This document shows positions 19,788-40,201 of a DNA stretch of 64,000 nt, piece after piece (the stretch's first letter is position 1; each line of letters starts with the position of its first letter). The stretch is taken from positions 62,001-126,000 of IMG/VR virus record IMGVR_UViG_3300033153_013547; one strand, 5' to 3'. Below the pieces are notes generated by a model, which ran no database searches, was not told the origin of the DNA, and was given only the letters and a program-made list of their open reading frames with translations. Position numbers and translations under genes: made by a program.

Positions 19788-19825
19788 GTGGGGGGCGATC
19801 CTGTCTCGATGTTGACAGGATCCAT

Positions 19826-19857: not shown

Positions 19858-19860
19858 CGG

Positions 19861-19952: not shown

Positions 19953-19971
19953 ATCCGATTTTGAAAAGGGG

Positions 19972-20537: not shown

Positions 20538-20628
20538 GTCATATCGCAGATTTCCTAACCGGTGTCTGCCAACCGGCCACAGCCAAAATAGTGACTGTGG
20601 CCACCGCCTACGTTGCGGAGGCGGTGGT

Positions 20629-20835
20629 TTAAAACCCCCGAGCCTCAAGGTCGAGGCATATGTCTTCGTATGCCTCGACCTTGAGCTCGTCAGCAAGGGA
20701 ATCTAAATAACTCCCTTGCTGAACGTTGAGGCGTTCTACCTTGCGGCAGAACGCCTCAACAAGCTCAAGGCGACGATAAGGATTCTTGCAATCCTTAATC
20801 GCCTCCTTGAGCTTAAACAACTCAAGAAATCTCAT
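20629..20835 (-). CDS. 68-aa hypothetical protein, first gene of array (start revised)
   Basis: AAGGAGG SD before MRFLELF. Confidence 0.7.
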   Translation of the reverse strand: MRFLELFKLKEAIKDCKNPYRRLELVEAFCRKVERLNVQQGSYLDSLADELKVEAYEDICLDLEARGF

Positions 20836-25987: not shown

Positions 25988-26943
25988 TGAACACACTATA
26001 TTTATACATAATAGTAGCAACATTATATCTGGGGATCCTTATATTTGCATCCTATAAACTGGGCATTATTACTTGGCTGATTGGCATGCTGATCATACCA
26101 GCATCTATAGGCACCATTCTAGCAGAAGTAGACATAGCACGTGGGGCTCTGTCTATGCTGACTGGGTCAGAGCTGGGATCCATGGTGATTTCTTTTTCTT
26201 TGGCCGTAGGTTTGTTGTTTTCATCTCACTGGTTGGCCAGTTGTATATTGAAATCTAGGTTCCATGAATTACATATGCCAAGCATTCTACTAGTAATGCT
26301 CATCATCTTATTTGGTTGGTTAGGAATGCTGAGAGTAGAGTTAGTAACATCATTTTTGCCTGATGACATAATAACCCAATCTAAATATATTTTCTTCATA
26401 TATCCCTTTATTTCTCTCACTTTGGGCTTTGCTTTGGCAGCAACCATAAGACCAATAGAACAAAAGTTCAAAAGAGCACATTTGTCTGCCCTTTTACTGA
26501 TGTCTAAAAAATCAGAGGAAGATGGATCAGCCATGGTAGCAGCCAGTGAGCTTGTTGATAAATTAGAATTTTCTCATGACAAAGCCATCAACTATGTATT
26601 GGATGAATCTGAATTTTTTGCAAAACTAACAGGAGAACCTGATGATCAAGCAAAATCAACAGAATCTGCCCCTGAAAAACCACCAGAAGCAGTGGTAATT
26701 GAGAAAAACCCAGAGATAGAAGAAGAATCTCCAGAGGACACTACTATTACTAATACAGATGCTAATATAAAACCGGAAATTCCTGTAAAAAAGCCTGTGA
26801 CAACCAAAACAACAGGAACTAAAATTGTTACAAAAACCAAGAAAAAATTCGTAAAAGAAATACACAATCCATACAGGGAAATACGTAAGACAAACAGAAA
26901 AATAAGAAATAAAGCCAACAAAAAGGTGGTGCCCTTAAAGTGA
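25987..26943 (+). CDS. multi-pass membrane protein with charged C-terminal tail
   Basis: ~5 TM segments; start overlaps the vWA gene stop. Confidence 0.75.
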   Translation: MNTLYLYIIVATLYLGILIFASYKLGIITWLIGMLIIPASIGTILAEVDIARGALSMLTGSELGSMVISFSLAVGLLFSSHWLASCILKSRFHELHMPSILLVMLIILFGWLGMLRVELVTSFLPDDIITQSKYIFFIYPFISLTLGFALAATIRPIEQKFKRAHLSALLLMSKKSEEDGSAMVAASELVDKLEFSHDKAINYVLDESEFFAKLTGEPDDQAKSTESAPEKPPEAVVIEKNPEIEEESPEDTTITNTDANIKPEIPVKKPVTTKTTGTKIVTKTKKKFVKEIHNPYREIRKTNRKIRNKANKKVVPLK

Positions 26944-27073: not shown

Positions 27074-27604
27074 ATGCCAGACATAAAAGAATATACAAGT
27101 ATTGATCCTAATGTAAAGTTTTTGGGTGCTGCTACTGTGCACTCTTTTACTAGTATAGATGGAGATGTAGTGATTGGAGACAATACCACAATATGGCAAT
27201 CTACAAATATTGCAGGCAAAGTTTCCGTAGGCTCAAATTGTGTAATTGGTTCTCAGTGCTCAATTCTGGGCACCAAGATGCCCACAATCATTGGCAAACA
27301 TGTTCGTATGCAGTCTCATTGTTTTATTCCTGATGGCACAGTAATTGGAGACAACACCTTTCTTGCCCCTGGGGTTACGATTTTGAACGATAAATATCCC
27401 CCATCATCCAGTCACAAAGATTGGAGTCCCGTAACAATCGAAAATGGGGCACGTATAGGCGGAGGAGTAGTCATTTTACCCGGCGTCACCATTGGCAAGG
27501 GTGCTCTGGTGGGGGCAGGTTCGGTTGTGACCAAGGACGTTATTCCCAACTCTGTGGTCAAAGGAAGCCCAGCAAGGATTTGGGTGATACCATCCCTTGA
27601 ATAA
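27074..27604 (+). CDS. hexapeptide-repeat sugar N-acetyltransferase (WbpD/WlbB-like)
   Basis: Left-handed beta-helix repeats; NDKYP; [29 protein letters not shown]. Confidence 0.88.
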
Positions 27605-28439
27605 TAAAACATTTGCCATATCTGGATTGGGTAGCATATCCCCACGTCATTTGGAAGCCGTGAAGCATATTGGGGGCATCATTCTTGACGTACATGATCC
27701 TGATTGGAGCAAATCATATTTTTATGGAAGGCAGGCAGTCTTTCACAAATCCATTGAAAGCATGCTTGAAAAATCAGAAGCAGAATGGTTTGTCATTTTG
27801 TCTCCCAGTAAATACCACTTTTCTCAATCTATGAAAGCCCTGGATCTGGGCAAGAAAGTTATAGTAGAAAAACCTGCTGCTATGACTCTATATGACGTTC
27901 TACAATATTCTGGACGAGAAATCTATACCGTATCACAACTACGATATCTCGACGACATTATCAACATCAAAAATAAAATATCTACAGGTCACCATGATGT
28001 AAACATCAAGATCATAGCACACAGGCATCCCATAACCATGGCAAACTGGAGACATGACATAAATTGGTCTGGTGGGCTAATGTATTTCGTAGGCATTCAT
28101 TACATAGACTTAGTCACTTGGTTGTTTGGCAAGATGGAAAAATTAGAACAAGTTACTTGGCTAAACAAACAAAAGTGCCAATTTAGTATGGAGTTAGAAA
28201 GAGCCACAGTCAATGCCAGCTTTGAAATTACTGAAACCCAACCAAACCACAAGAGCATGATCATAGATGATATAGAAATAGATTTGGCTGCCAAGTTTTA
28301 TGATTTACATTGTTATTTATATGAAGATATAATGGCAGGACATGGCATTCATCCAATGGATGTATATCATACTATGGAGATTATTCATAAGATTAATGGC
28401 TATGCCAATGAAGGATATGGCTACAATGCTTCTAAATAA
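27597..28439 (+). CDS. Gfo/Idh/MocA oxidoreductase (WbpB/WlbA-like)
   Basis: [33 protein letters not shown]. Confidence 0.85.
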
Positions 28440-29389
28440 GCAGCTATATTTTCATGGGCATTAGCAGGGGGAACAATAATTTCTAAATTACCAGCCCTAA
28501 ATGACCTAATAGCATTGGCCAAATACTCACTACTATATCCCACTATTATACCATAGCCTGTGTCTATAATTGCTTGGTGTTCTGTGTTACTACGAGGAAT
28601 AATTACTGTCTTACCCAACCAATAAGCCTCACGTTGAATGCCGCCGGAATCTGTTGCAACAAATTCAGAATTGACTAACAGAGAAACAAGTCTCTTGTGT
28701 GATATAGGATCTATAAGCCTTATATTTTTGGGTATCAATAAACCAAACTCTTGTATTCTTGCCTTGGTTCTTGGATGAATGGGCCAAACAAAACTATATT
28801 CCTCACAAGTTCCTATGGCATGCAAAACAGATGATAGTCTTGCTCTATTGTCCACCAATTCTGCTCTATGAAGGGTTATAAGATTTTCATTACTTGTGCT
28901 ATAAGGATCCAAATCATATGACATAATTTTGTCATAGACAGGATCTCCAACAATAGTGGAATTATGCAAACCTTCCTTAGATAAATTCCTTTGACAATAT
29001 TTGTCAGTGCACAACAAATGATCTGCCATTTTATCCACAGACATTCTAATCCTTTCTTCTATGGCTTCGTTGTCATAACACCTCATTCCTGCTTCAATAT
29101 GTACTAACGTTTTGTTGCACATTTTAGCACAAATAGCTCCAGCAAGAGTGCTTCTTGTGTCTCCTAAAACACAGATGATTTTGGGATTGATATCATTGAC
29201 AATTTCTATTGCTGCATCTATGGTTTCCCCCAAGCTGGTTTTCAGCAAATTGTAATCACAATTCACTGCATCATGTATGTCATTGAGATTAGCATCATAG
29301 TGCTGACCAGTATTTACTATAATACTAGCCCAAAGTCTGGATAATTTCAATAATTCAGGACGTGTGCCTATGATTGTTAGGACTTTCAT
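28421..29389 (-). CDS. UDP-N-acetylglucosamine 2-epimerase (WecB/WbpI-like)
   Basis: GTRPE, TGQHYD, LGDT, HIEAGMR, TLHRAE, HPRT, TDSGGIQREA. Confidence 0.92.
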   Translation of the reverse strand: MKVLTIIGTRPELLKLSRLWASIIVNTGQHYDANLNDIHDAVNCDYNLLKTSLGETIDAAIEIVNDINPKIICVLGDTRSTLAGAICAKMCNKTLVHIEAGMRCYDNEAIEERIRMSVDKMADHLLCTDKYCQRNLSKEGLHNSTIVGDPVYDKIMSYDLDPYSTSNENLITLHRAELVDNRARLSSVLHAIGTCEEYSFVWPIHPRTKARIQEFGLLIPKNIRLIDPISHKRLVSLLVNSEFVATDSGGIQREAYWLGKTVIIPRSNTEHQAIIDTGYGIIVGYSSEYLANAIRSFRAGNLEIIVPPANAHENIAAYLEAL

Positions 29390-29398
29390 TTGTGTCTC

Positions 29399-30280
29399 CT
29401 AAAACGTATCAAAAGTATCTGGATATACTTTATTGGGTAAGTTCTTTCTTATTCGCAACTGAGACCATTGCTTATCATAGTTGAGTAAAGAGACTTCTTT
29501 GCTTATTCTATCAACGGTCTGTGCCACATTGTCTCCACAATATACTTTTACATTATAATCCATTGTTTGGGAATCTATTTCTAGTGCCCAGTTCTGATCA
29601 CCCAACTTCCATCCACCCTGAGAATTGTCTACATCCCATAAAAAGGTACCAAGACTATAAGCAATAATACCATCTCTATATCTTTCAATGCCAGAAGGAA
29701 TGTGTGGGTGGGCTCCAGCAATAATATCTGCCCCCCAATCAATAATATCATGGGCCAATCTTTTTTGAGATGGTAATGGATAAGGTTCTCCCTCATATCC
29801 CCAGTGTAAGGACACAATGATGGTGTCACAAGACTTTCTAATTAGATTGATATCTCTTCTGATTTCTTGACGCTTGATGTCTCTTGCCCCCACTCCATCA
29901 AGATGACCAGAAGTTGTCATTGGCCAAACATGCCATGAATAGGCCAGTAAACCAACACCATTGGTAATATTATACGTCCCATCCCCAAACACACCAGTAT
30001 AACCCACTCCCCACTGATCAAGATATTTTTTAGTAATATCTACCCCCTCTTTGCCAAAATCATAAATATGATTATTAGCAAGCGATACTGTAGTGAGATT
30101 CATATTCTTTATGGGTTCTGGAGCAGACCGTATACCAAATCTCCATGACCATCTTGGTGTCGGGTGCAAGGTTGTTCCGCCAAGTGGTCCTTCTAAATTG
30201 GCAAAAACATAGTCAGATTCAGGTTGATAGGGAGATTCTTGTTTCCTGGAACAAATATCGCCTATTAATATAATTTTCAT
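29399..30280 (-). CDS. CapA/PGA_cap family metallophosphoesterase
   Basis: GD, NLEGP, SLANNHIYDFG, SLHWGYE, GAHPH, YSLG. Confidence 0.88.
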   Translation of the reverse strand: MKIILIGDICSRKQESPYQPESDYVFANLEGPLGGTTLHPTPRWSWRFGIRSAPEPIKNMNLTTVSLANNHIYDFGKEGVDITKKYLDQWGVGYTGVFGDGTYNITNGVGLLAYSWHVWPMTTSGHLDGVGARDIKRQEIRRDINLIRKSCDTIIVSLHWGYEGEPYPLPSQKRLAHDIIDWGADIIAGAHPHIPSGIERYRDGIIAYSLGTFLWDVDNSQGGWKLGDQNWALEIDSQTMDYNVKVYCGDNVAQTVDRISKEVSLLNYDKQWSQLRIRKNLPNKVYPDTFDTF

Positions 30281-30295
30281 TATTGTTTTCTCCTA

Positions 30296-31531
30296 TTACT
30301 TGACTGGAGGAAAATCATCTTGGTTCAACCATTTCTTCCACTTGTCTACATAACATCCATATCCATTATTATCTGGAGCAGTGTTGCCGCTATAAAAATC
30401 AAAGCCAGTATCCAATAATATAGATCCAATGTCTTCTCCTCTCCAAAGCAATTTGAGTATAGATTCATTGGCTTTGTATACCCATTCTGGCACAGACTTG
30501 CCATCAACAAGTTCCATGGCATATTGATGAGTATCAGAAATCAAAGGATTGAGCACGTCACGATTTCTTGGTCTTTTATTGATGCCAACAATCCCCGGAT
30601 TATGGCCAACTGCCTTTATCAAGGTGTACACATTGTGACAAGTACCACACGCATAACACCACGGCATACCCGTCATACAAGATCTCTGAAAGCTTGCTAT
30701 TTTTGGATACCTATCAAGCAAGAGTCTTTGTACACCCAGTGTGCTCAGAGCATGGGTGACGGACGAAAAATCTATATCCAGCAAACCAGAAGAAACGCAT
30801 CCCAAATGAAACAAAGAACAATTGGGACGTGGCAAGAGATTATCATTATTCGTTTTGGAAAACGGCATTTCTAACCCAGAAAGAATGGTAGAAGCGCCAT
30901 AAGCATATGCTAAGGGAACCGCGAATAACCACCACGGGATTATTTTATAACCGAATGAGCTCATATAATTGGTCATTATTTGACAATTAGGAATGCTTAA
31001 TATAGCATATACTTTAGACATGGCTGCCCGCCGCTCCTGCCACAACGCTTCGGTTTTGTACTGATTGCCAATTGTAAAGGCTATAACGTTTTCAGAAATT
31101 TCTGATGCCAAACTCACACAAGTTAGCCCGTCCTTACCCATACCATTCCCAGCAAGCACAGCCCGTTTCTTATCCATGCCCTGATCTTGAACAATCTTAT
31201 TGCACACTACCGTCATCGGCTTGCCGTTCTTGGTAACAAAACCATAAGGATTAGTTTTGTGATTTACATTGATGTGTCGCTGAATGGCAGATATCTCTGA
31301 TTCAGTTAGTTCACTGAAAATGACTTTGTCATATAAATGAGATGACCAAGCAAGATGTTCAGACAATATAATGGCTATCATGAAGTTTAGCACATGATCT
31401 GGTGCCACACCAATATCACGGTCATACTTGATCCATAGAGGACGCAGAGTTTTGCCAGAAAATTTAGTCAATAAATGACTAAAGCCAAATTCTATCGTGG
31501 AACTATCTCGTCTATTTAGTGTAATACGCAC
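30296..31531 (-). CDS. PP-loop-like (adenine nucleotide alpha-hydrolase) protein with Cys cluster
   Basis: GNGMGKDG (SGGKDS-like) and SC...WCYACGTC, a QueC/MurL-like layout. Confidence 0.5.
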   Translation of the reverse strand: MRITLNRRDSSTIEFGFSHLLTKFSGKTLRPLWIKYDRDIGVAPDHVLNFMIAIILSEHLAWSSHLYDKVIFSELTESEISAIQRHINVNHKTNPYGFVTKNGKPMTVVCNKIVQDQGMDKKRAVLAGNGMGKDGLTCVSLASEISENVIAFTIGNQYKTEALWQERRAAMSKVYAILSIPNCQIMTNYMSSFGYKIIPWWLFAVPLAYAYGASTILSGLEMPFSKTNNDNLLPRPNCSLFHLGCVSSGLLDIDFSSVTHALSTLGVQRLLLDRYPKIASFQRSCMTGMPWCYACGTCHNVYTLIKAVGHNPGIVGINKRPRNRDVLNPLISDTHQYAMELVDGKSVPEWVYKANESILKLLWRGEDIGSILLDTGFDFYSGNTAPDNNGYGCYVDKWKKWLNQDDFPPVK

Positions 31532-31532
31532 G

Positions 31533-32558
31533 TTACTTGCCTACCAGCTTACCACCACAACACAATCGTTGACAAGGAGGAGGAAACCCATTCTCGATAA
31601 TAAAATTATTGAGTTCTGTAAGAGCCTTGGTATCTAAAACAAGGGGAGGACCAATATTTCCGAATACTCTTGTGTCAAAACACCTACCACCAGCAGGTAT
31701 TGTGCCATCGGGATTGATGGCCAGTCTTTGCCCTGCAAGCAAGGCAGAAATTATTCTACAACCATTACGTCCCGACGCAACAAACTTTGTGGGAGATTCT
31801 TGATAATATTCTTTGAGATCTGATAAGGTAGATAATTTTGGATAGCAATAAGGGAACAATTTATGCTTAGTCAATTGCTCAAATATTTTATTACAGTTCA
31901 TTTGATGTATTTGTTCTTCTGTATATCCAGAGATATTTGCTGGTTTACACACACCCCCTGGCGCATCAAAATTACACGACAATGGAGACACATAATTATA
32001 GTGATTGAAAACCATTTGATGAATGCCAAGGGTTTTGGTAATAAACACATGCATTGCACCCAAATGCATGTAATTATCTGGGGTAATGGCTAGGGAAATT
32101 CTTATGGTCTTATATTTGAACTTTTTCTTCAGCAATAGAATTCCATTTATAGCTCTATCAAATGATCCATCAACTCCACGTATTTTATCATGAATATCTG
32201 CAGTAGGCCCATCTAAACTTACTGCCAATGAATCAATGTGTTTGGCAATTGTCCCAGCATACTTTTCAAGATACCAACCATTAGTTGTCATACTTATAGA
32301 TATTGGCCCCTTGAGATGTGAACGCAAACTAGCACACAATTCATCAAACTTTTTGTATAGTAGTGGTTCAGCACCCAGAATGGCTATGGCTTTCACATCT
32401 AATTGCTTGAGCCCATTTATCCATTCTTCAGGCTCCAATTCATGAGCACCTGGAATCCATGTGCCACCAAAACCAGACGCATCATGCTGACCCTGTCCAA
32501 TATCACACATTTTGCATCGTAAATTGCATCTATTAGTAATGATCATGCTGACATTCAT
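31533..32558 (-). CDS. radical SAM protein with SPASM/twitch-like C-terminus
   Basis: CNLRCKMC, GAEPLL, TTNG, VSLDG..HDKIRG. Confidence 0.9.
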   Translation of the reverse strand: MNVSMIITNRCNLRCKMCDIGQGQHDASGFGGTWIPGAHELEPEEWINGLKQLDVKAIAILGAEPLLYKKFDELCASLRSHLKGPISISMTTNGWYLEKYAGTIAKHIDSLAVSLDGPTADIHDKIRGVDGSFDRAINGILLLKKKFKYKTIRISLAITPDNYMHLGAMHVFITKTLGIHQMVFNHYNYVSPLSCNFDAPGGVCKPANISGYTEEQIHQMNCNKIFEQLTKHKLFPYCYPKLSTLSDLKEYYQESPTKFVASGRNGCRIISALLAGQRLAINPDGTIPAGGRCFDTRVFGNIGPPLVLDTKALTELNNFIIENGFPPPCQRLCCGGKLVGK

Positions 32559-32567
32559 AATAATTCC

Positions 32568-33392
32568 TTAACTATTAGACAACGCCCAGGCAGCAATGGC
32601 TCTTGCCCTGAAGTTAGGGGCAACAATGGTTTCTTGTGTTGTGATATCTAACGCTTTCTTAGCAATATCCTTATTGAGATTTTTACAGGCCATATAAATC
32701 ATTGGTGGGCCCCAACCTGCTCGCCCACGATATCCAGGGCGTGTAACCCACATGGCCTCAAGACGCTCCATTGATAATGCCACAATATCCTGCGTATTCA
32801 ATCCATAAGCCACGTCTGCTTCCTTCAAACAATAGATAATCATGGCCAAATGATATGGGTCTTCTTCTCTGACATATGTGTCATCTTTCATGTTCATATA
32901 TTTCCAGTTGTTGATATTAGGATCTAGATAGCTTACAAGAACATCTATAAGTTTATTGGCCTTGTCTATTTGTCCATTCATTGCAAAAACCAAGGCTGCC
33001 GATGCACTCACGTTGGGAACAAGATATTCAATATCAACACTGCAATATTTTTGCATGCCATTAGGATACAATCCTATGGATTCTATTGTTTTTGCCAGTC
33101 TATTAATTAGATCTGTGTCACCAATCACCCTGGCAAATTCACAACAGGCCCACGCTGTATAGGCAAACTTAGTGCCCTTAGGACATAAAACCTTGTGTAT
33201 ACCGCACGCATAATCGGCATGAAGAGTACAGTCTCTTTGTATTATCTGATCATAGCAATCTTTGTAATCCAAATTAGCCAAAGCGCGTGCGGTTCCCAAA
33301 AACGCAAAGCCATCAGCACTGTCTTGTTCAAAATAATGATTATTCACAGGATATTCTATTGAGCCAATAATTTTCTTATTTTTTTTGTGCAT
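32568..33392 (-). CDS. hypothetical helical protein
   Basis: 274-aa ORF in operon. Confidence 0.7.
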   Translation of the reverse strand: MHKKNKKIIGSIEYPVNNHYFEQDSADGFAFLGTARALANLDYKDCYDQIIQRDCTLHADYACGIHKVLCPKGTKFAYTAWACCEFARVIGDTDLINRLAKTIESIGLYPNGMQKYCSVDIEYLVPNVSASAALVFAMNGQIDKANKLIDVLVSYLDPNINNWKYMNMKDDTYVREEDPYHLAMIIYCLKEADVAYGLNTQDIVALSMERLEAMWVTRPGYRGRAGWGPPMIYMACKNLNKDIAKKALDITTQETIVAPNFRARAIAAWALSNS

Positions 33393-33399
33393 TGATTCT

Positions 33400-34392
33400 C
33401 TATTTCCTGGGTGTTCTTCTCAGCGGACGCCGTCTATTATAAGATCTTGGTCGTTGATGAACCGTCTTCTTAACGGACCTCTCTGATTTGGGCGCTTCTT
33501 TAGCCTTTGATTTGGGGGCCCGTTTTTTGACTCGCTTTTTAGATGATGCTTTGGGTGGTTTCACAAGATTCCTTGCTACAAGATCTCTTGGTTTTCTGTG
33601 AGCCTCATGATTGGGCACATATTGCTTTAGTTCCAATAGCCTGTCTACAATATCTTTTGGAATATATTGCTTTATGTCTATGTCTATTTCAACCCAAGGT
33701 GCGCTTATCCTCTGTCCCCTGAAATTGCCTTGTGGGCTAGATAGATTATTAAGCCCTCTGGTCCACAATGCATGTTGCCAACTATCAGAATTATTCCAGC
33801 ATACATTTAGTGGTTTGCCAGCATTTGCAACAATTGCTTGTTTATACAACCAACTATCATTTGAGCGTATACTATTCATTGGCACAAGATTTTTGGTCAG
33901 CCTACTATTGATAGCAAAGTTTATTGACACTGGATGTTTATAACCAGGATGATCATGATCAAAAAGATAATACTTGTGTGTTAACAAATCTAGCCACCAG
34001 CCTTTCTTGACCTGTGTCCAATCAGCAGATTTATCTTGAAAAATCTCATGGATCTCAGATAGTATGGTGGGTGGCAAATAATTATCACCAGCCACAGGGA
34101 ATAACACACGTGATGTGGAAGCCATCTTGTCCGCAATAATTTTCCACTTCCTGGACAAAACAATCCACTCATCAATAGATATATAACGAATATTCAGACA
34201 ATTGACTTGTCGCAATCTTTCTTCGAATTTAGCAACTTCTTCGGACCCAAACATATATTCGTCTTGTTCCTCACAAACAATGAGTTCCCACCCAAAATCA
34301 ACACTGATCTGCCCACACAAAGATTCCAAGGCAAGCCAGCCAATGTGTTTACAATTGAACATTGGTAAACCAACTGTCAATTCAATTTCCAT
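33400..34392 (-). CDS. GT-A (family 2-like) glycosyltransferase with basic C-terminal tail
   Basis: LTVGLPMFN...LESLCGQ...WELIVCEE. Confidence 0.65.
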   Translation of the reverse strand: MEIELTVGLPMFNCKHIGWLALESLCGQISVDFGWELIVCEEQDEYMFGSEEVAKFEERLRQVNCLNIRYISIDEWIVLSRKWKIIADKMASTSRVLFPVAGDNYLPPTILSEIHEIFQDKSADWTQVKKGWWLDLLTHKYYLFDHDHPGYKHPVSINFAINSRLTKNLVPMNSIRSNDSWLYKQAIVANAGKPLNVCWNNSDSWQHALWTRGLNNLSSPQGNFRGQRISAPWVEIDIDIKQYIPKDIVDRLLELKQYVPNHEAHRKPRDLVARNLVKPPKASSKKRVKKRAPKSKAKEAPKSERSVKKTVHQRPRSYNRRRPLRRTPRK

Positions 34393-34394
34393 AA

Positions 34395-35468
34395 TTATAG
34401 TCCTGAATATATATCATTCCATATATTAGCCACTGAAGCATAACTATGATGCTTGTGTACCCAATCCTTGGCACATTTTGATACGTCGGTCAAATCCATA
34501 TGAATAAGAGACAACAACGTATAATAAATATCATCTGGATTAGGAAGCACATTTATAATACCGTCCAACTCTTCTCGGACAAATCTGCCGCTCGATTGGT
34601 CGACAGCTCGATCTGAAACCCACACAAGAGTGGGTATTCCATAACTCATTGCTTCTAACCCAGCATAACCATATGCCCCAACAACACACTGCTCAAACAA
34701 TACATAAGACTGCTTGGTTCGTCTGAGACATTCTTTATGAGATAATTTTTCTATAAGATTTAATTGAGCTTCGGGATACTCTGACGCTAATTTATTCATG
34801 GCTGCCAAAAATGTATCGGTACCCTTTATAATCCTCGAACTAGGAGCATGGCTGATCAATTTTGTTTTCGAATGATCATGCTTGAACCATTCGTTATCCA
34901 TTTGATCACAGTCTATTGCTTGTGGAGTATAAACTCCTTTAAATTCTGGATAATTGATGTCTGGCGTCAATGTTGTTCTAATAGCCGCACTCATATACAT
35001 ACGCATTGGCCATATAGCCAATGCAGATTGCTTGTTACAGTAGTCATCACGCCTTCTAAATTTTGATCCTTCTACAGATGAAATAATTGGCACACGAGGG
35101 CTGCGCATTTTCAATAATTGATCAAATGCACTCCATATTACCGATGGCGGCTCATCCCCTTTATAATGAATAATATCAGCATTTTGAATAAGATTTTTGG
35201 CTTGTTCAATGCTCTCCCAATTTGCCTGGTCCGTTCTCATAAGACGATAACCGTCCCCAATGGGGCTGAGCTTGATGTTGGTTAAGCAAACATTTCTTGG
35301 CATTTGAAATCTATTGCCATGATCTGTGAGAACAATATGATCAACCTTATGCTTTGTGTATTTATTAACAGCACGAGCTATGCGCAAACCAGCAGCAGCA
35401 TAGTCAAACAACGATAACATGACAATGTTTTTGCCTTCCTTAGCCGTCTTTTTGACTGTCTTTATCAT
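34395..35468 (-). CDS. GT-B (family 4-like) glycosyltransferase
   Basis: HAPS...KGT; GAYGYAGLEAMSYGIP. Confidence 0.8.
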   Translation of the reverse strand: MIKTVKKTAKEGKNIVMLSLFDYAAAGLRIARAVNKYTKHKVDHIVLTDHGNRFQMPRNVCLTNIKLSPIGDGYRLMRTDQANWESIEQAKNLIQNADIIHYKGDEPPSVIWSAFDQLLKMRSPRVPIISSVEGSKFRRRDDYCNKQSALAIWPMRMYMSAAIRTTLTPDINYPEFKGVYTPQAIDCDQMDNEWFKHDHSKTKLISHAPSSRIIKGTDTFLAAMNKLASEYPEAQLNLIEKLSHKECLRRTKQSYVLFEQCVVGAYGYAGLEAMSYGIPTLVWVSDRAVDQSSGRFVREELDGIINVLPNPDDIYYTLLSLIHMDLTDVSKCAKDWVHKHHSYASVANIWNDIYSGL

Positions 35469-36202
35469 TCTTCAGTCACCACTGGCTTGACATTGCCAAC
35501 CAACCAACCATCTTTATTGGCCTGTCCATATAAATATTTGCCTTTTGGCTGTTTCAAATGATAGCAGAAAGAGTCCCTGTGTGTAAACATCTTGATACCA
35601 GCATTCGTCAGTCTCATAGAGAAATTATGATCAGAAGAAACCCCACTTGTTTTTCCACGAGCAACGGCAGTGTATTTTGCAAATGGAAATTCAAGCCACA
35701 AATCTCTCTTGATAGTTGTTATAGAGTAACTTACTAAAAACGTCTCAATAATTTGATTCTTATAATTAACCACTTCATCTAGTTTCAGCAAGTCATAATC
35801 ATCTGCTCTAGGATAATCTTGCTGTTTTAGTGTCACAGGACTTTTGGCCAAACTCACATATTCAGAATCCACATATAGATTACAATATCCTGTAAACACA
35901 TCAAACTTAGACATTTTATCCAATACATTGGTAAATGCTGTTTGATTGAGCACAAGATCATCACTTGTTACAATATAATAATCATAATTGGTATTCTTGA
36001 CATAATCATTGAGCACACCACTTATCTGTAAAGAATTGAAACCAGTAAACCATACTTTCTTGATATTGATGGGCTTTATTGAATCAATTACTCGATCAAT
36101 ACGACGAGGATTCATAATTAGCAAGCAAGCATTATCAATATACGTGTCAGGATATCTGCTAGCAGCAACTTCCTGGCTATAAGAAGGATAAGCAATAAGC
36201 AC
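35465..36202 (-). CDS. GT-A-like glycosyltransferase
   Basis: YDYYIVTSDD, SSDHNFS, CYHLK. Confidence 0.55.
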   Translation of the reverse strand: MLIAYPSYSQEVAASRYPDTYIDNACLLIMNPRRIDRVIDSIKPINIKKVWFTGFNSLQISGVLNDYVKNTNYDYYIVTSDDLVLNQTAFTNVLDKMSKFDVFTGYCNLYVDSEYVSLAKSPVTLKQQDYPRADDYDLLKLDEVVNYKNQIIETFLVSYSITTIKRDLWLEFPFAKYTAVARGKTSGVSSDHNFSMRLTNAGIKMFTHRDSFCYHLKQPKGKYLYGQANKDGWLVGNVKPVVTEE

Positions 36203-37290
36203 TACAACAACCCTCTCAGATGCTGGGACAATCTATTAGCAACGTTTTGTGGATCAAAATCCGACAAATCAAGTTTTGATATATGTTGTCTATACTGATC
36301 TATGTTGTTACATACATCCAATAACTTATTAGACATGGCAGAAACAACATGGGGATCGGCAGGATCAATGGCAAATTTGCTTAACCCCTCTTGACCGCCA
36401 AACACCTCTATATTGGCAGGGGTATTTGTAACAATTGGAATACATCCATGAGCCAGGGATTCGACAATTCTAATACTACCACAAATATTGAAAAGCTTCT
36501 GCCCCTTATGATAGACAAACAAACGTTTTTGATCATACATTGAAAAGGTAACAACACAACGGCGATAATATTTGTATGCTTCTGCCATAGACAAGGGGGT
36601 CATTTTGATGTTCTGGTTTCTGTTAACCGCTTTTAGTATTTGGCCATATACATCGCGATCTTTTACACACGAAGTTCCCACTACCATTTGAGATGGGGTT
36701 AGTTTATCAGACACAGCGCAAAAAGCCTCAATGGCTTCTCTACTAAAGTGATTATTGTTGATAGTATCAAATGTCCCTACACAAAAATCTCTGACCACAG
36801 AAGCATCTTTGGAAGTTACTATACAGGGTTGAACATGTGCGGTAGGCAAAGTCTTCATTTTCAATTTTTGCAAATATGCAATAGTAATTTCATGATAGAG
36901 TTTGCCAACAACAGTAAATCCATCTATCAATGAATAATGATACAAATCCGTAGCCAATAATGACTTGTAATGATCACTATTTTCAAACCATCTTGGATAA
37001 AATTCTAAACAAATTGGTGTATTGGGAAAAGATTTTCTGAGCAAAGGAACAAGATTTGCTCCACGAACATACAAAACATCGGGCTTTATAGATTGAATTT
37101 TCCGTATATTAGGTGCTATCTTGCCATTGATAAGAGAAATGTCTTTGGGAATCTGTTTGATCAGCGCAGAGCAGTTGGCCGCCAAATACGGGGTGGCAAC
37201 CAATTTCATTGCGCGAATAAGGTTGATTGCGCGAGTTAGTGGTCCGTTGAAAAGTCTGTAATTACCATCCAGACAATATATCACTTTCAT
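36202..37290 (-). CDS. GT-B-like glycosyltransferase
   Basis: SIRIVESLAHGCIPIVTN. Confidence 0.65.
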   Translation of the reverse strand: MKVIYCLDGNYRLFNGPLTRAINLIRAMKLVATPYLAANCSALIKQIPKDISLINGKIAPNIRKIQSIKPDVLYVRGANLVPLLRKSFPNTPICLEFYPRWFENSDHYKSLLATDLYHYSLIDGFTVVGKLYHEITIAYLQKLKMKTLPTAHVQPCIVTSKDASVVRDFCVGTFDTINNNHFSREAIEAFCAVSDKLTPSQMVVGTSCVKDRDVYGQILKAVNRNQNIKMTPLSMAEAYKYYRRCVVTFSMYDQKRLFVYHKGQKLFNICGSIRIVESLAHGCIPIVTNTPANIEVFGGQEGLSKFAIDPADPHVVSAMSNKLLDVCNNIDQYRQHISKLDLSDFDPQNVANRLSQHLRGLL

Positions 37291-37452
37291 TTGTCTTGTT
37301 CTTTTCGGGGTGTTCTGGATCTTTGATGCTATTCATTTTTATTTTCATTATGTATTTTATGATGACATGGTACACAAATGGATCATATCCACTTCTTTCT
37401 TTTAATTGCTTATACACAATTCAATCCAGTCAAATAGTATTTGTTTCTTTCT

Positions 37453-38355
37453 CTAGCCATTCTTTTTTCTGCAAGGAATACCCTCTTTTCTCATAATCCT
37501 TATGATATTGGCCTCTGTCATCCCAATCTCATCTGCAATTTCATTAGATGATTTGCCTTTACCCCAGTACTCGCAATATAACCAAGTTTTATCCAAATAT
37601 GGTTTATCGCCATCAATTGTTTGACCCATAGACATTATGGCTTCAAATAACCATTTCATATCATCTGGGACCAATTGATGCATCAGCACAGCATTTGGCT
37701 CAACACAGTGGCCACCACATGCCTCATCATAATGATCCATCACGGGTCTGTTGAATTTCTCAGGCGTCATAACACCTTTATTGTATTCCTTGTTCCATTC
37801 AGTATAAACCACATCAAAGGGCACATCATAATATTCACAAAGTTTATGTACAAACTTTTCAAACAATATGTTCCAGCCATAATAGGTTGTACACATCACC
37901 TTTGTAATTTCTGTGGTTTCTGGAGGACAATCTATAAGGGGCCTGACATTTCTGCATACTGTAGAAAACATGTCAGCCACTTCCATAATTCTGTCTGGAT
38001 CCATTCCACCAATAAACATCGTTATCCTTTTGATGTGTTCTGCCAAATGAGGGTGTTTACCATGGGTAGGTACATGAACTGCCCTGTTTCCCAATTTCCT
38101 CATAGTTCCTGGTGTTAGAGTTGAATGTACAACAATTGTGTGAGGCTTATATTCATCAGCATAATTGTTCACACGTTCAACAAATTTACCATCACCAGCA
38201 TCTGGGAAGGCTATGTGCATGAAATCCACTTGGCCCCACAAAAATTCAATGGGATCTGCATCTCTGATTAAAACAGATGCTCCAGAAATTTCATTCAAAA
38301 TTTCAAAAATAGCAGTTCCAACTTCTCCTGCCCCCACTACAATGTGCTTTGTCAT
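37453..38355 (-). CDS. UDP-sugar dehydrogenase-like protein with C-terminal HTH
   Basis: VVGAGEVG, HSTLTPG, TEITKVMCTTY, GGHCV. Confidence 0.75.
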   Translation of the reverse strand: MTKHIVVGAGEVGTAIFEILNEISGASVLIRDADPIEFLWGQVDFMHIAFPDAGDGKFVERVNNYADEYKPHTIVVHSTLTPGTMRKLGNRAVHVPTHGKHPHLAEHIKRITMFIGGMDPDRIMEVADMFSTVCRNVRPLIDCPPETTEITKVMCTTYYGWNILFEKFVHKLCEYYDVPFDVVYTEWNKEYNKGVMTPEKFNRPVMDHYDEACGGHCVEPNAVLMHQLVPDDMKWLFEAIMSMGQTIDGDKPYLDKTWLYCEYWGKGKSSNEIADEIGMTEANIIRIMRKEGIPCRKKNG

Positions 38356-39362
38356 TGTTGCTCCATCAACCTTTTTACCAACCCAACATCTGTATACCCA
38401 TGGTTTAGGGCAAATAATCTACCCTGCTGGGCAATTTTTTCTCTTTCTTTATCATGGATTAGATAATGTTTTATTAGTTTTATACACTCATCATTGGTTT
38501 TGAACCAAACAAGGTGCTCACCATTCTTGAACATCTTTTCAAATCCAGGTTTATATTTGATCAAAACAAAACTACCAGACAGCATGGCATTGGCTGTTCT
38601 TATACTGGTAGCCATTGGTAGCTTCCCTATATCATGGCATAAAGTTATTTTAGACTGATTGAAGATCTTGTTGCACTGAGTAAATTTAGCAATGCTTTTA
38701 TCCCCACTATTGTTACCTAAAAATATACCACCAATCTTGGCCCAATCTTTTGATCCAAGTAAAGCAATTTTTACACCAGGCAATTTGGGAATAATGTATT
38801 TTAGCCACTGTATTCTTTCTTGCAAAAAATCAGCAGAGGGCTTGTTATATGACTGCCCCACAAAATTGACATCATAAATTTTGTTAGTATTTATTGGTTT
38901 GAAATATGTGGTTAGTCCAGGAGGATAACAGTAAGTGGCATTGACTACAGCATCAACAGCAAGCTTATCTGATACTAACAGTATTTTGGCATGCTTACCA
39001 ATTGTTTTTAGATCAGCAATAAAACTTGATTTCCAGCCTATGCTGGCATCACTATAGAAGACTCTTATGGTCAGTTTTGGTGCTTTCTTTTTCAGTCTAG
39101 GCAATATTTGACAATACTTTCTAATAGTGCTTCTGTTCATGTGTATTGCTAAATCTGAACAGCCACGAGTCAAATGAACAATTTGTTTTGTAATTTTGTC
39201 ATAGTCAGTAGATTTTAATATCCAACGAATCGAGCAATATTTAAGCCCACAAGAATCTGTTCTTCCATTCAAAAAACAAAAGCTATGATCAGATAAGTTC
39301 GCTATATGTTTATACATATTGGCGGTGATTGGAATTAGTGGTATAACCGCAACTTTGGGCAT
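38352..39362 (-). CDS. CgeB-like GT-B glycosyltransferase
   Basis: YDVNFVG, SKITL, SIRT..AMLSGSF, FKNGEHLVWF, EREKIAQQG. Confidence 0.8.
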   Translation of the reverse strand: MPKVAVIPLIPITANMYKHIANLSDHSFCFLNGRTDSCGLKYCSIRWILKSTDYDKITKQIVHLTRGCSDLAIHMNRSTIRKYCQILPRLKKKAPKLTIRVFYSDASIGWKSSFIADLKTIGKHAKILLVSDKLAVDAVVNATYCYPPGLTTYFKPINTNKIYDVNFVGQSYNKPSADFLQERIQWLKYIIPKLPGVKIALLGSKDWAKIGGIFLGNNSGDKSIAKFTQCNKIFNQSKITLCHDIGKLPMATSIRTANAMLSGSFVLIKYKPGFEKMFKNGEHLVWFKTNDECIKLIKHYLIHDKEREKIAQQGRLFALNHGYTDVGLVKRLMEQQ

Positions 39363-40201
39363 TATGACATAATCTCCACGTCTAAAAAAGTAGGGCTCAA
39401 GGATTTTATAGATGTACCTTTATTTTTGATAGACTGTAGCAGCCCACTGAATGCTTGTGTATTAACCCACACTTTCTGTCCATCACCACGAAAGTGTATG
39501 TTTTTGTTTAAAGATCCATCATAGTAAGTATCTCCAGACATATCTATTCCACACAGAATTATTTCTTTAGCTCCTCCATAATAAGCAGCCTGCACAGCAC
39601 ATCCAGCAATAGTTGCTCCACCCCTCAAGATTTTGGGTATTAGCATAGAATCTGCTACGGACACAGATGGAGATGCAATAAAAGTGTATTCACAAGGGTA
39701 TCTTGTTATGACGGATCGACTAAACAATCTAGGAACATTATAGGTCATAGCTGTGTTCCACCAGTCTTTTTGGGAAGCACGGTAGTCAAAAACCATCCAT
39801 ATGTTGGACGAAGGCCTGATCATTATTCCTTGATTGACAGCAATGACAAAAGCATCTTGTGGTATCTTGTCATAAAAAGGCTTGCCATTTGGCCCTGTAG
39901 CTAAAATATACACCGTTTCTGGTATAATTTTGATGAGATCAGAACTAAAAAAATCTACAGCTTTACTATTGACTGGCTTGAAAGTTTGTCCTCTTTGTCC
40001 TCTGATTCTGTGTCTGGGCTTCCCAAGAACGAGGCTTTTTTGGGGTTTGGGTTGTATTGCTGTTCTTTTTACAACGTTTTTTTTGGAATTACTGGTATAA
40101 CGACGATTGGCAACACGTTTCTGAGCCTTCTTTTGATTTTGAGGTCGAGAAACTATTCGTGTTTTTCTGGTACCACTTGTGAAATTGCTGCTTCTTCTCA
40201 T
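39362..40201 (-). CDS. Maf/GT42-like (MptE-like fold) putative sugar transferase with basic N-terminal extension
   Basis: ILATGPN, VIAVN, GAKEIILCGIDM. Confidence 0.6.
   Translation of the reverse strand: MRRSSNFTSGTRKTRIVSRPQNQKKAQKRVANRRYTSNSKKNVVKRTAIQPKPQKSLVLGKPRHRIRGQRGQTFKPVNSKAVDFFSSDLIKIIPETVYILATGPNGKPFYDKIPQDAFVIAVNQGIMIRPSSNIWMVFDYRASQKDWWNTAMTYNVPRLFSRSVITRYPCEYTFIASPSVSVADSMLIPKILRGGATIAGCAVQAAYYGGAKEIILCGIDMSGDTYYDGSLNKNIHFRGDGQKVWVNTQAFSGLLQSIKNKGTSIKSLSPTFLDVEIMS

What the first reader, a model, noticed from the sequence alone, without database searches (positions are those of the whole stretch)
27074..40201. 13-kb glycan island resembling a diacetamido-uronic acid pathway plus about six transferases
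Seen: UDP-sugar dehydrogenase-like, Gfo/Idh/MocA oxidoreductase, hexapeptide acetyltransferase, 2-epimerase, GT-A/GT-B/CgeB/Maf-like transferases, radical SAM, PP-loop-like and CapA phosphoesterase genes; no flippase or polymerase recognised. Known: WbpA-WbpB-WbpE-WbpD-WbpI make UDP-ManNAc3NAcA; the WbpE aminotransferase is not in this window. Inference: virion or DNA glycosylation with a rare, further-modified sugar rather than host O-antigen synthesis.
Basis: partly seen in the sequence, partly recalled or inferred. Interest (0 to 1): 0.62.

Follow-up and report, generated by a model that had tools for sequence, protein, structure and literature searches.

The report
Jumbo-phage sugar-making and sugar-attaching island
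A 261-kb uncultured phage carries a compact 14-gene block that appears to make a rare acidic, N-acetylated amino sugar (minus one enzyme it must borrow from its host), modify it further, and attach it with about five soluble transferases to a target inside the cell. That target is most likely the phage's own proteins, not an O-antigen and, by every known route, not DNA.

Summary
Window 27074-40201 contains 14 tightly packed genes of a complete 261-kb jumbo phage. The composition of the block matches the rest of the genome.

- **Sugar module.** Four genes match four of the five Wbp/Wlb steps to UDP-ManNAc3NAcA: a WbpB/WlbA-like 3-dehydrogenase, a 3-amino-sugar N-acetyltransferase, a non-hydrolysing 2-epimerase and a truncated UDP-HexNAc 6-dehydrogenase-like protein.
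- **Missing step.** The WbpE aminotransferase is absent from the whole genome. A metagenomic cluster with homologues of all four genes does carry a DegT gene.
- **Tailoring cassette.** A second module recurs in other metagenomic glycan islands, at least one of them viral: a QueC-like PP-loop enzyme, a radical SAM enzyme, an alpha/alpha-toroid protein and a CapA-like protein.
- **Transferases.** GT-A, GT-B, CgeB-like and Maf/CstII-like transferases are supported; one more is weak and one gene is unassigned.
- **Target.** No island protein has a membrane segment, and no Bac_transf-type initiating transferase was found, so O-antigen-style assembly is unlikely. No ThyA homologue, TET/JBP, C5-methylase, TGT or QueD was found, so DNA glycosylation has no support. 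Glycosylation of phage proteins is the favoured reading but is untested.

This is a new variant of viral glycosylation machinery. Almost none of it has homologues in GenBank phages.

The parts
27074..27604 (+). A: left-handed beta-helix N-acetyltransferase of the QdtC/WlbB (WbpD-like) class, 176 aa
   Evidence: Pfam Hexapep 1e-27. Best solved relatives are nucleotide-sugar 3-amino N-acetyltransferases: 7s3u 5e-27, WxcM-like 4mzu, QdtC 3fs8 and WlbB 3mqg 2e-18. 52% identical to the homologue in L004, where a DegT gene follows it.
27597..28439 (+). B: WbpB/WlbA-like Gfo/Idh/MocA UDP-sugar 3-dehydrogenase, 280 aa, TTG start, overlaps A by 8 bp
   Evidence: Pfam GFO_IDH_MocA N- and C-terminal domains. 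PDB 3o9z/3oa0 8e-26 and 3oa2 (WbpB) 1e-22, against 1e-10 or weaker for other family members. 45% identical to the L004 homologue. No tblastn match in 50,697 GenBank phage records.
28421..29389 (-). C: non-hydrolysing UDP-HexNAc(A) 2-epimerase (WecB/WbpI-like), 322 aa; last gene of the minus-strand operon, converging on B
   Evidence: Epimerase_2 1e-57. TIGR00236 wecB 4e-42 against NeuC 1e-14. PDB 4neq 6e-40 and UDP-2,3-diacetamido-2,3-dideoxy-glucuronic acid 2-epimerase 8sxv 2e-35.
29399..30280 (-). D: CapA/PGA_cap metallophosphoesterase-fold protein, 293 aa
   Evidence: PF09587 4e-41. Weak match to the MslH epimerase model, 4e-14. 43% identical to the homologue in L002, which lies one small ORF upstream of the rSAM and E homologues.
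30296..31531 (-). E: QueC-like PP-loop (adenine-nucleotide alpha-hydrolase) enzyme, 411 aa, with an N-terminal ~120-aa domain of unknown fold and a C-terminal Cys cluster
   Evidence: No sequence-family hit. AF2 model pLDDT 78.6, pTM 0.83. Foldseek: QueC 3bl5 6e-5, QatC, Cap9, TrmU, NadE, LarE. VIA: Cap9 Z 12.4 and QueC Z 12.3 over residues 122-311. Family-invariant NGxGKDG and QRSC...C..C..C motifs.
31533..32558 (-). F: radical SAM enzyme, 341 aa, CxxxCxxC at residues 11-18, Cys-containing C-terminal region
   Evidence: PF04055 1.5e-22. Best NCBIfam hits are the PTO1314 family and SPASM/twitch-type maturases, all below cut-off. Best PDB hits are BlsE cytosylglucuronate decarboxylase 4.5e-6, SkfB and MoaA. 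Homologues lie beside E in L002, L008 and L011.
32568..33392 (-). G: (alpha/alpha)6-toroid, carbohydrate-enzyme-like protein, 274 aa
   Evidence: No Pfam, PHROG or NCBIfam hit. The Atlas model (pTM 0.87) matches clusters carrying GH88/GH76/AGE/C5-epimerase-like families at TM 0.76-0.85. Co-occurs with E and F in L002/3, L008 and L011/13.
33400..34392 (-). H: GT-A fold glycosyltransferase (residues 1-260) with a disordered ~65-residue Lys/Arg-rich tail, 330 aa
   Evidence: AF2 pLDDT ~95 over the core. Foldseek: Leptospira GT 6p61 1.5e-9, TarP 5e-9, TarS, SpsA, RmlT. Family profile against PDB: TarS 0.0017. Homologues are 234-286 aa and lack the tail. Paired with E in L001/L015 and L008.
34395..35468 (-). 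I: GT-B (GT4-like) glycosyltransferase, 357 aa
   Evidence: No direct Pfam hit. hhalign against an alignment of seven Pfam-annotated GT4 proteins gives probability 81%, E 1.3e-5 over residues 162-343, including the E-x7-G-x-P motif region.
35465..36202 (-).
   Evidence: No hit in Pfam, PHROGs or NCBIfam, in hhalign against the GT2 and H-family alignments, or in GenBank phages. Its start overlaps K by 1 bp and its end overlaps I by 4 bp, suggesting translational coupling.
36202..37290 (-). K: probable GT-B glycosyltransferase, 362 aa (weak support)
   Evidence: Pfam Glycos_transf_1 E 0.046 over residues 272-325. hhalign against the GT4 alignment gives E 0.0043 with only 8% probability. No match in GenBank phages.
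37453..38355 (-). L: 'mini' UDP-N-acetylhexosamine 6-dehydrogenase-like protein (Rossmann plus central catalytic domain, no UDP-binding C-domain), 300 aa, with a ~55-aa C-terminal HTH remnant of an HNH homing endonuclease
   Evidence: TIGR03026 6e-8 and PHROG UDP-glucose dehydrogenase 2e-5, with HNH PHROGs matching residues 249-298. Belongs to a family of 223-255-aa relatives. Invariant GxGxxG, E149, K152 and IGGHC217. Family profile against PDB: UDP-ManNAcA dehydrogenase 4r16 5e-12, Cap5O 2e-9, UGDHs. The closest relative is a 461-aa fusion with an HNH domain.
38352..39362 (-). M: CgeB-like glycosyltransferase (Glyco_trans_1_2), 336 aa
   Evidence: PF13524 8e-21, 74.9 bits against a cut-off of 25.
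39362..40201 (-). N: MptE-like / Maf / CstII (GT42)-like putative glycosyltransferase, 279 aa; first gene of the minus-strand operon
   Evidence: PF01973 8e-6, below cut-off. 322 related clusters, and 26 of 40 sampled relatives hit PF01973. Family profile against PDB: top hits are CstII sialyltransferases at 0.02-0.06, with Maf 5mu5 at 0.39. Conserved N-terminal 'VYIVAxGPNG' motif.

Best explanation
The island is a phage-owned, entirely cytoplasmic glycosylation system made of three modules.

**1. Nucleotide-sugar module (L, B, A, C).** It follows the Wbp/Wlb logic:
- UDP-GlcNAc is oxidised at C6 by L.
- It is oxidised at C3 by B.
- It is transaminated by an enzyme the phage does not encode, so the host must supply it.
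- It is N-acetylated by A.
- It is 2-epimerised by C, giving a UDP-2,3-diacetamido-2,3-dideoxy-hexuronic acid.

Without a host aminotransferase, C plus L could still make UDP-ManNAcA (the WecB/WecC route).

**2. Tailoring cassette (D, E, F, G).** The QueC-like PP-loop enzyme E most likely adenylates a carboxylate, presumably the uronate C6 carboxyl, and converts it to an amide-type derivative. The radical SAM enzyme F, the toroid protein G and the CapA-like protein D carry out further, still undefined changes.

**3. Transferases (H, I, M, N, probably K; J unknown).** These soluble enzymes assemble the glycan directly on an acceptor reachable from the cytoplasm. Phage-encoded, probably virion, proteins are the favoured acceptor.

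Shown: gene content, folds and families, absence of the aminotransferase, absence of the membrane-assembly and DNA-acceptor genes searched for, and recurrence of the modules.

Inferred: substrates, products, order of steps and the acceptor.
For: **Sugar module.**
- B is closest to WbpB/WlbA.
- A is closest to 3-amino-sugar N-acetyltransferases, including WlbB.
- C is closest to non-hydrolysing 2-epimerases, including the UDP-GlcNAc3NAcA 2-epimerase.
- The L family keeps the Rossmann motif and the catalytic Cys motif. Its profile is closest to UDP-ManNAc/HexNAc 6-dehydrogenases.
- The metagenomic locus L004 has homologues of L, A, B and C at 43-52% identity. It also has a DegT aminotransferase gene directly after the A homologue. 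The four genes therefore travel as a set whose usual fifth member is the aminotransferase.

**Cassette.**
- E+F+G co-occur in four independent contexts, and E+H in two.
- E is fused to, or lies next to, a methyltransferase in two loci.
- The E fold matches QueC and Cap9.

**Cytoplasmic, non-lipid route.**
- The highest 19-residue hydropathy of any island protein is below 1.7.
- The genome has no Bac_transf, no canonical GT2 and no SDR epimerase.

**Phage-owned.**
- Island GC is 0.385 against 0.381 for the genome, and its tetranucleotide distance lies below the genome-window mean.
- The genome is complete, with terminal repeats.

**Viral and virion link (circumstantial).**
- In L001/L015 the E-H pair is separated by one small ORF from a gene that hits virion structural / tail-spike PHROGs at 1e-44.
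- In L009 a lone H homologue lies one small ORF upstream of the terminase genes.
- In the window, a morphogenesis block starts about 6 kb from the island.

**Precedent.** Methanococcal archaellin N-glycans are protein-linked and contain GlcNAc3NAcA and ManNAc(3NAm)A with threonine amide-linked at C6 (PMC4187195).
Against: - One essential enzyme, the aminotransferase, is missing, so the full diacetamido route cannot run on phage genes alone.
- L lacks the canonical UDP-binding domain, so its substrate is uncertain.
- No acceptor has been identified. No strikingly Ser/Thr-rich virion protein stands out, apart from one stretch in a 2641-aa ORF.
- H is structurally closest to enzymes such as TarP, TarS and RmlT, which glycosylate host teichoic acids. 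Its basic tail would suit any polyanionic acceptor: teichoic acid, DNA or an acidic membrane.
- N's characterised relatives use CMP-nonulosonic acids, but the phage has no NeuB or CMP-sugar synthetase.
- The functions of D, F, G and J are guesses.
- The E model rests on only six sequences.
Confidence: 0.5

Rival explanations
1. Host-envelope remodelling. The island's soluble transferases decorate a host polymer on the cytoplasmic face of the membrane, for example teichoic acid, a lipid-linked glycan or S-layer/appendage glycan precursors. Host carriers and exporters then display it. This would change the receptor and so block superinfection, or mask the infected cell, in the way prophage TarP does. 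The host's own Wbp-type pathway would supply the aminotransferase.
For: - H's nearest structures are the wall-teichoic-acid glycosyltransferases TarP (prophage-encoded), TarS and RmlT.
- H's Lys/Arg tail suits a polyanionic polymer or acidic lipids.
- Dependence on a host aminotransferase implies a host that already makes 3-amino sugars.
- Relatives of the mini-dehydrogenase L also occur in loci with Wzx-type flippases and Bac_transf that look like cellular surface-polysaccharide clusters.
Against: - The phage has no initiating transferase, flippase, polymerase or ligase, and no membrane protein lies within the island.
- A 14-gene investment with about five transferases is large for receptor masking by a jumbo phage.
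- Homologous cassettes lie in metagenomic contigs, at least some viral, near virion genes.
- The E family was not found in 185,579 prokaryotic species genomes by its two invariant motifs.
Confidence: 0.22
2. DNA hypermodification. The transferases, especially H with its basic tail, glycosylate phage DNA with the unusual sugar to evade restriction and CRISPR.
For: - Phage transferases related to LPS and teichoic-acid enzymes are known to glycosylate 5hmC or 5hoC in DNA (bioRxiv 10.1101/2023.12.21.572611; PMC13326640).
- The Lys/Arg-rich disordered tail of H could bind DNA.
- E resembles QueC, an enzyme of the 7-deazaguanine pathway.
Against: - The complete genome has no ThyA homologue (the dCMP/dUMP hydroxymethylase or hydroxylase), no TET/JBP dioxygenase, no C5 DNA methylase, no TGT/DpdA and no QueD. 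The control genomes gave hits for each family, though for TET/JBP only one of 14 and below cut-off.
- H homologues elsewhere lack the basic tail.
- N- and CgeB-type enzymes are known from protein or spore-coat glycosylation, not from DNA (established knowledge).
Confidence: 0.07
3. Not a glycoconjugate on a macromolecule. The radical SAM / QueC-like / CapA(MslH)-like / toroid genes, together with the sugar genes, make a diffusible glycosylated small molecule or modified peptide (nucleoside-antibiotic-like or RiPP-like) used against the host or its competitors.
For: - F's best solved relative is BlsE, the cytosylglucuronate decarboxylase of blasticidin S biosynthesis. It also resembles the peptide maturase SkfB.
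- D's only specific model hit is the lasso-peptide epimerase MslH.
- QueC-type enzymes act on small molecules (established knowledge).
Against: - All of these matches are weak and below family cut-offs.
- No precursor peptide, exporter or immunity gene was recognised.
- The cassette always sits among several glycosyltransferases and sugar-nucleotide genes.
- The cassette lies near virion genes in L001.
Confidence: 0.08

Closest known systems
Wbp/Wlb pathway to UDP-ManNAc3NAcA (WbpA, WbpB, WbpE, WbpD, WbpI) of Pseudomonas aeruginosa, Bordetella and Thermus (PMC10622841)
   Same: B, A and C have these enzymes, or their nearest classes, as best solved relatives. L belongs to the UDP-HexNAc 6-dehydrogenase superfamily and keeps the catalytic Cys motif. 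The homologous cluster L004 carries the aminotransferase as well.
   Different: No WbpE anywhere in the genome. The dehydrogenase lacks its UDP-binding domain. The genes are encoded by a phage, split over two strands, and embedded among soluble transferases instead of Wzx/Wzy/WaaL machinery.
Methanococcus archaellin/S-layer N-glycan (GlcNAc3NAcA, ManNAcA6Thr, ManNAc3NAmA6Thr) (PMC4187195)
   Same: A protein-linked glycan built from diacetamido uronic acids whose C6 carboxyl is further amidated. It is the best chemical precedent for a Wbp-like module combined with a carboxylate-activating enzyme.
   Different: The archaeal system is lipid-linked, flipped and transferred by AglB. Homology between E and the Agl tailoring enzymes was not tested, and the host of this phage is unknown.
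Mycobacteriophage virion glycosylation and giant-virus autonomous glycosylation (PMC11256854 and PMC9614988, listed)
   Same: Virus-encoded transferases (and, in giant viruses, virus-encoded nucleotide-sugar pathways for rare amino sugars) that decorate capsid or fibre proteins without host-type lipid carriers.
   Different: Mycobacteriophages carry about two transferases (PMC11256854) and, from memory, no sugar pathway. Giant viruses infect eukaryotes. None of the island's genes has a convincing homologue in 50,697 GenBank phage records.
QueC / QueC-like enzymes (preQ0 synthase; Cap9 and QatC of anti-phage systems)
   Same: E shares the PP-loop fold and a C-terminal Cys cluster (Z about 12). 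Members of this group adenylate a carboxylate and form an amide or nitrile.
   Different: The PP-loop is divergent (NGxGKDG rather than SGGxDS). E has an extra N-terminal domain. The genome has no QueD, TGT or other deazaguanine genes. The neighbours are always sugar enzymes.
Phage DNA glycosylation clusters (T4, RB69/DLP3 5hoC-arabinose, MT-5mYOX-GT clusters)
   Same: Phage-encoded transferases, sometimes with nucleotide-sugar genes.
   Different: Each defining acceptor-forming enzyme searched for was absent.

Membership tests
Wbp/Wlb UDP-ManNAc3NAcA pathway | WbpB/WlbA-type NAD-dependent UDP-GlcNAcA 3-dehydrogenase | tested here: met
   B: PDB 3o9z 8e-26 and 3oa2 1e-22, far ahead of other Gfo/Idh/MocA enzymes. 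Activity was not assayed.
Wbp/Wlb UDP-ManNAc3NAcA pathway | PLP-dependent 3-aminotransferase (WbpE/WlbC, DegT family) | tested here: not met
   The six-frame PF01041 search of the complete genome gave no candidates, while all 14 control genomes scored. tblastn with three DegT proteins from related loci found nothing. PF00155 was also absent.
Wbp/Wlb UDP-ManNAc3NAcA pathway | 3-amino N-acetyltransferase (WbpD/WlbB) | tested here: met
   A: best solved relatives are all nucleotide-sugar 3-amino N-acetyltransferases, with WlbB at 2e-18. This is a class-level assignment only.
Wbp/Wlb UDP-ManNAc3NAcA pathway | UDP-GlcNAc 6-dehydrogenase (WbpA) with N-terminal, central and UDP-binding domains | tested here: inconclusive
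   L has the Rossmann motif, the catalytic Cys motif and the central domain. It has no C-terminal UDP-binding domain, and the family is only 223-255 aa long.
Wbp/Wlb UDP-ManNAc3NAcA pathway | Non-hydrolysing 2-epimerase acting on UDP-GlcNAc3NAcA (WbpI) | tested here: inconclusive
   C is a non-hydrolysing Epimerase_2. 8sxv matches at 2e-35, but a plain UDP-GlcNAc 2-epimerase (4neq, 6e-40) scores slightly better.
Lipid-linked surface polysaccharide locus (O-antigen/capsule) | Initiating phosphoglycosyl transferase, flippase/ABC exporter, polymerase/ligase | tested here: not met
   No Bac_transf in the genome. No island protein has a transmembrane-like segment. No such Pfam family appears in the island. 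WecA-type and Wzx/Wzy families were not searched genome-wide.
Phage DNA glycosylation on hydroxylated pyrimidines | ThyA-homologue hydroxymethylase/hydroxylase, or C5-methylase plus TET/JBP dioxygenase | tested here: not met
   PF00303, PF12851 and PF00145 gave no match at E<=0.1 in the complete genome.
7-deazaguanine (preQ0/ADG) DNA modification | QueC together with QueD, QueE, FolE and a DpdA/TGT transglycosylase | tested here: not met
   E has a QueC-like fold, but no TGT and no PTPS/QueD were found. F does not score as QueE among its best 25 NCBIfam models. FolE was not searched.
Maf-type flagellin nonulosonic-acid glycosylation | MptE-like/GT42-like transferase domain | tested here: inconclusive
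   N scores 26.2 bits against a cut-off of 34.6. 26 of 40 relatives hit PF01973. The profile hits to CstII and Maf are weak, E 0.02-0.4.
Maf-type flagellin nonulosonic-acid glycosylation | Nonulosonate synthase (NeuB/PseI/LegI) and CMP-sugar synthetase | tested here: not met
   PF03102 and PF02348 are absent from the genome. C is of the non-hydrolysing type, not NeuC-like.
Virus-encoded virion protein glycosylation | Glycan demonstrated on virion proteins, dependent on viral transferases | not testable with these tools
   Only circumstantial evidence exists: soluble transferases, and proximity of homologous cassettes to tail-spike or terminase genes in L001 and L009.

The most novel reading that the evidence does not exclude
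The E-F-G cassette (with D and H) is an undescribed tailoring system, found so far only in metagenomic, apparently viral, contigs. It activates the C6 carboxylate of an acetamido-uronic acid with a QueC-like enzyme and converts it to an amide, nitrile or amide-linked (and elsewhere methylated) substituent, with radical-SAM chemistry on the same sugar. The jumbo phage uses it to coat its own virion proteins with a Methanococcus-like, charge-neutralised diacetamido-uronamide glycan built entirely in the cytoplasm, while borrowing only the host's aminotransferase.
Probability: 0.2. Interest if true: 0.78.

Novelty: new variant of a known kind. Interest (0 to 1): 0.6.

Why it matters
Autonomous synthesis of rare sugars by viruses is well documented for giant viruses of eukaryotes. 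For phages, what is known is mainly one or two transferases, or DNA glycosylation. This island would be one of the most elaborate glycosylation systems in a tailed phage: a near-complete route to a bacterial/archaeal-type diacetamido uronic acid, an uncharacterised four-gene tailoring cassette and about five soluble transferases.

The island offers three testable points:
- Whether a family of 'mini' sugar 6-dehydrogenases works without the canonical nucleotide-binding domain.
- What chemistry a QueC-like enzyme performs in a sugar context.
- Whether a phage can depend on a single host enzyme, the aminotransferase, for its glycan. That dependence would tie host range to the host's surface-sugar metabolism.

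Tried and rejected
- **Nonulosonic acid pathway** (suggested by Maf-like N and the 2-epimerase): rejected. There is no NeuB and no CMP-sugar synthetase, and C is of the non-hydrolysing type.
- **Deazaguanine DNA modification** (suggested by QueC-like E next to a radical SAM gene): rejected. There is no TGT/DpdA and no QueD.
- **Hydroxymethyl- or hydroxy-pyrimidine DNA glycosylation:** no ThyA homologue, TET/JBP or C5-methylase.
- **A hidden aminotransferase among the unassigned ORFs:** the PF01041 and PF00155 six-frame searches and tblastn with three DegT proteins found nothing. PF00202 and PF00266 were not searched separately.
- **A split or intron-containing dehydrogenase gene** (suggested by the HNH match in L): L is instead a member of a short family, with the remnant of a fused homing endonuclease.
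- **Recent capture from the host:** composition is indistinguishable from the rest of the genome.
- **Close relatives of the phage or island.** These searches led nowhere:
  - megablast and tblastn against GenBank phages;
  - peptide-pattern scans of IMG/VR with E, B and the portal protein;
  - a scan of GTDB genomes with the E family.
- **Ser/Thr-rich acceptor proteins:** the scan found nothing decisive.
- **Consensus promoter/terminator scan:** uninformative, 94 promoter-like sites against 71 expected.

Full report
**Context.** The window is bases 62001-126000 of a single 261,124-bp IMG/VR virus record. The record has direct terminal repeats and is rated 100% complete. It is a jumbo tailed phage:
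- PhoH lies at 24015-24953.
- A class II ribonucleotide reductase with an intein lies at 41225-44446.
- A portal gene lies at 59108-60535, within a morphogenesis block downstream of the island.

The portal is only 25-27% identical to those of Bacillus and Moorella jumbo phages. No close relative exists in GenBank phages or, by peptide patterns, in IMG/VR. One hydrothermal-vent metagenome run holds three short contigs with 0-3 mismatches to the island. That run may be the source sample.

**Anatomy.** There are fourteen ORFs in 27074-40201.
- A and B lie on the plus strand and overlap by 8 bp.
- The twelve genes N, M, L, K, J, I, H, G, F, E, D and C lie on the minus strand. The gaps between them run from -4 to 15 bp, apart from a 162-bp gap after L.
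- C converges on B with a 19-bp overlap.
- Island GC is 0.385 against 0.381 for the genome. Its tetranucleotide distance to the genome is below the mean of same-sized windows. The block is therefore long-resident phage DNA, not a fresh host fragment.
- No island protein has a transmembrane-like segment.

**Module 1, the sugar nucleotide.**
- B's best solved relatives are the WbpB/WlbA 3-dehydrogenases, at 8e-26 and 1e-22. The next two hits are at about 1e-10. From memory, not from a tool result, 3q2i and 3q2k are also WlbA orthologues.
- A's best relatives are all N-acetyltransferases acting on the 3-amino group of nucleotide sugars: 7s3u, WxcM-like, QdtC and WlbB.
- C is a non-hydrolysing 2-epimerase (wecB model 4e-42, NeuC model 1e-14). 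It matches the solved UDP-2,3-diacetamido-2,3-dideoxy-glucuronic acid 2-epimerase at 2e-35.
- L is the least canonical member. It belongs to a family of 223-255-residue proteins whose Atlas look-alike clusters are mostly viral.
  - The family keeps GxGxxG, a Glu/Lys pair and an invariant IGGHC motif that matches the catalytic-cysteine motif of UDP-sugar 6-dehydrogenases.
  - Its profile hits UDP-ManNAcA dehydrogenase (5e-12), Cap5O and UDP-glucose dehydrogenases, but only over the end of the N-terminal domain and the central domain.
  - The UDP-binding C-terminal domain is absent.
  - In this phage, L ends in a ~55-residue segment that matches HNH-endonuclease PHROGs. The closest relative (48% identity) is fused to an HNH-containing extension of about 160 aa. 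The tail is therefore the remnant of a homing endonuclease.

The five-enzyme pathway is described in PMC10622841.

**The missing step.**
- No DegT/DnrJ/EryC1 family member was found in six frames, while all 14 control genomes scored.
- tblastn with three DegT proteins taken from related metagenomic islands found nothing.
- No class I/II aminotransferase was found.

In contrast, locus L004 carries homologues of L (48%), A (52%), B (45%) and C (43%), and it has a DegT gene directly after the A homologue. The four phage genes thus belong to a set whose normal fifth member is the aminotransferase, and this phage has lost it or never had it. There are two ways to read this:
- The host supplies the transamination.
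- Only the aminotransferase-independent branch runs, with C plus L giving UDP-ManNAcA.

**Module 2, the tailoring cassette.**
- E has no sequence-family hit. Its model (pLDDT 78.6) matches QueC and the QueC-like Cap9 by two independent aligners (Foldseek 6e-5; VIA Z 12.3-12.4, residues about 122-311), followed by other PP-loop enzymes. The family has an invariant NGxGKDG loop and a QRSC...C..C..C cluster.
- F is a radical SAM enzyme. Its best solved relative, weakly, is the cytosylglucuronate decarboxylase BlsE.
- G is an (alpha/alpha)6 toroid resembling GH88, GH76, AGE and C5-epimerase-like proteins.
- D is CapA-like.

Comparative evidence links these genes functionally:
- E, F and G co-occur in this phage, in L002/L003, in L008 and in L011/L013.
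- D joins them in L002.
- E is paired with an H homologue in L001/L015 and in L008.
- L008 also holds homologues of C, A and a partial B.
- E is followed by a methyltransferase in L002 and fused to one in L010.
- The E family was not found in 185,579 prokaryotic species genomes by its two invariant motifs. This is a pattern-limited negative.

PP-loop enzymes adenylate a carboxylate or carbonyl before a nucleophile attacks (established knowledge). In a uronic-acid context the most economical inference is amidation, or a related conversion, of the C6 carboxyl.

**Module 3, the transferases.**
- H is a confident GT-A (core pLDDT about 95). Its nearest structures are 6p61, TarP, TarS, SpsA and RmlT. 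It has a disordered Lys/Arg-rich tail that its homologues lack.
- I has a GT4-type C-terminal domain.
- M is CgeB-like.
- N belongs to a large MptE/Maf/CstII-like family.
- K is weakly GT-B-like.
- J is unassigned.

**Which acceptor?**
- *Lipid-linked surface polysaccharide:* unlikely to be made by the phage alone.
- *DNA:* each acceptor-forming or base-exchange enzyme searched for is missing (mechanisms from PMC13326640 and bioRxiv 10.1101/2023.12.21.572611).
- *Protein:* favoured, for four reasons.
  - The system is soluble and self-contained.
  - Maf- and CgeB-type enzymes are associated with protein or spore-coat glycosylation (established knowledge).
  - In L001 the E-H pair is separated by one small ORF from a virion structural / tail-spike gene, and in L009 an H homologue lies one small ORF upstream of the terminase genes.
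  - Methanococcal archaellins carry exactly this kind of sugar, with an amide at C6.
- *Still open:* a TarP-like action on a host polymer.

**Verdict.** The island is best described as a new variant of virus-encoded glycosylation machinery, with one enzymatic step missing and an uncharacterised recurring cassette. Confidence that this is a glycan-building island with a Wbp-like module is high, about 0.9. Confidence in the full model, including a protein acceptor, is about 0.5.

Noticed in passing
window 12000-20700 (minus strand): This is a GC-rich segment (0.47-0.53 against about 0.38). It carries at least seven copies of a 70-116-nt repeat whose core is the palindrome CCCCAAAGCACAACTCTTTGGGG. 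On the minus strand, each copy lies just upstream of a gene start, next to a polypurine Shine-Dalgarno-like run. That placement suggests a shared regulatory or RNA element for a gene set that includes a macro-domain-like ORF (by eye, 15434-15931).
   Followed up: partly
window 37453-37620 and gap 37291-37452: The last ~55 residues of the dehydrogenase-like L match the N-terminal part of HNH homing-endonuclease PHROGs. The closest relative is a 461-aa dehydrogenase-HNH fusion. This looks like a decayed homing endonuclease fused to a sugar gene. It is followed by the only sizeable gap in the operon.
   Followed up: partly
window 41225-44446: The class II (B12-dependent) ribonucleotide reductase is interrupted by an intein with a LAGLIDADG endonuclease domain.
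   Followed up: no
window 25451-26943: Two membrane-associated ORFs lie directly upstream of A-B on the same strand. One is a lipoprotein-like 178-aa protein with a signal ending in LFSC. The other is a 318-aa protein with a multi-pass hydrophobic N-terminal half and a long charged, Lys/Glu/Pro-rich tail. Neither hits any family, and any link to the island is unknown.
   Followed up: partly
window 17646-18611: This 321-aa ORF contains an internal tandem duplication, seen as 336-nt-spaced repeats D7/D8. A related 107-aa ORF lies at 18669-18992.
   Followed up: no
genome 156319-164244 (outside the window): A 2641-aa ORF has a Thr/Ser/Pro-rich stretch near residue 2060. It is the only strongly Ser/Thr-rich real-looking ORF in the genome and a candidate glycan acceptor.
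   Followed up: no
L010:50-1849 and L011:9118-13805: In other metagenomic islands the QueC-like protein is fused to a methyltransferase domain (599 aa). In L011 it lies among an FrhB/FdhB-like protein, a 'sugar-transfer associated ATP-grasp', a sulfatase-like protein and an N6/N4 DNA methylase. These are further hints about the cassette's chemistry.
   Followed up: partly
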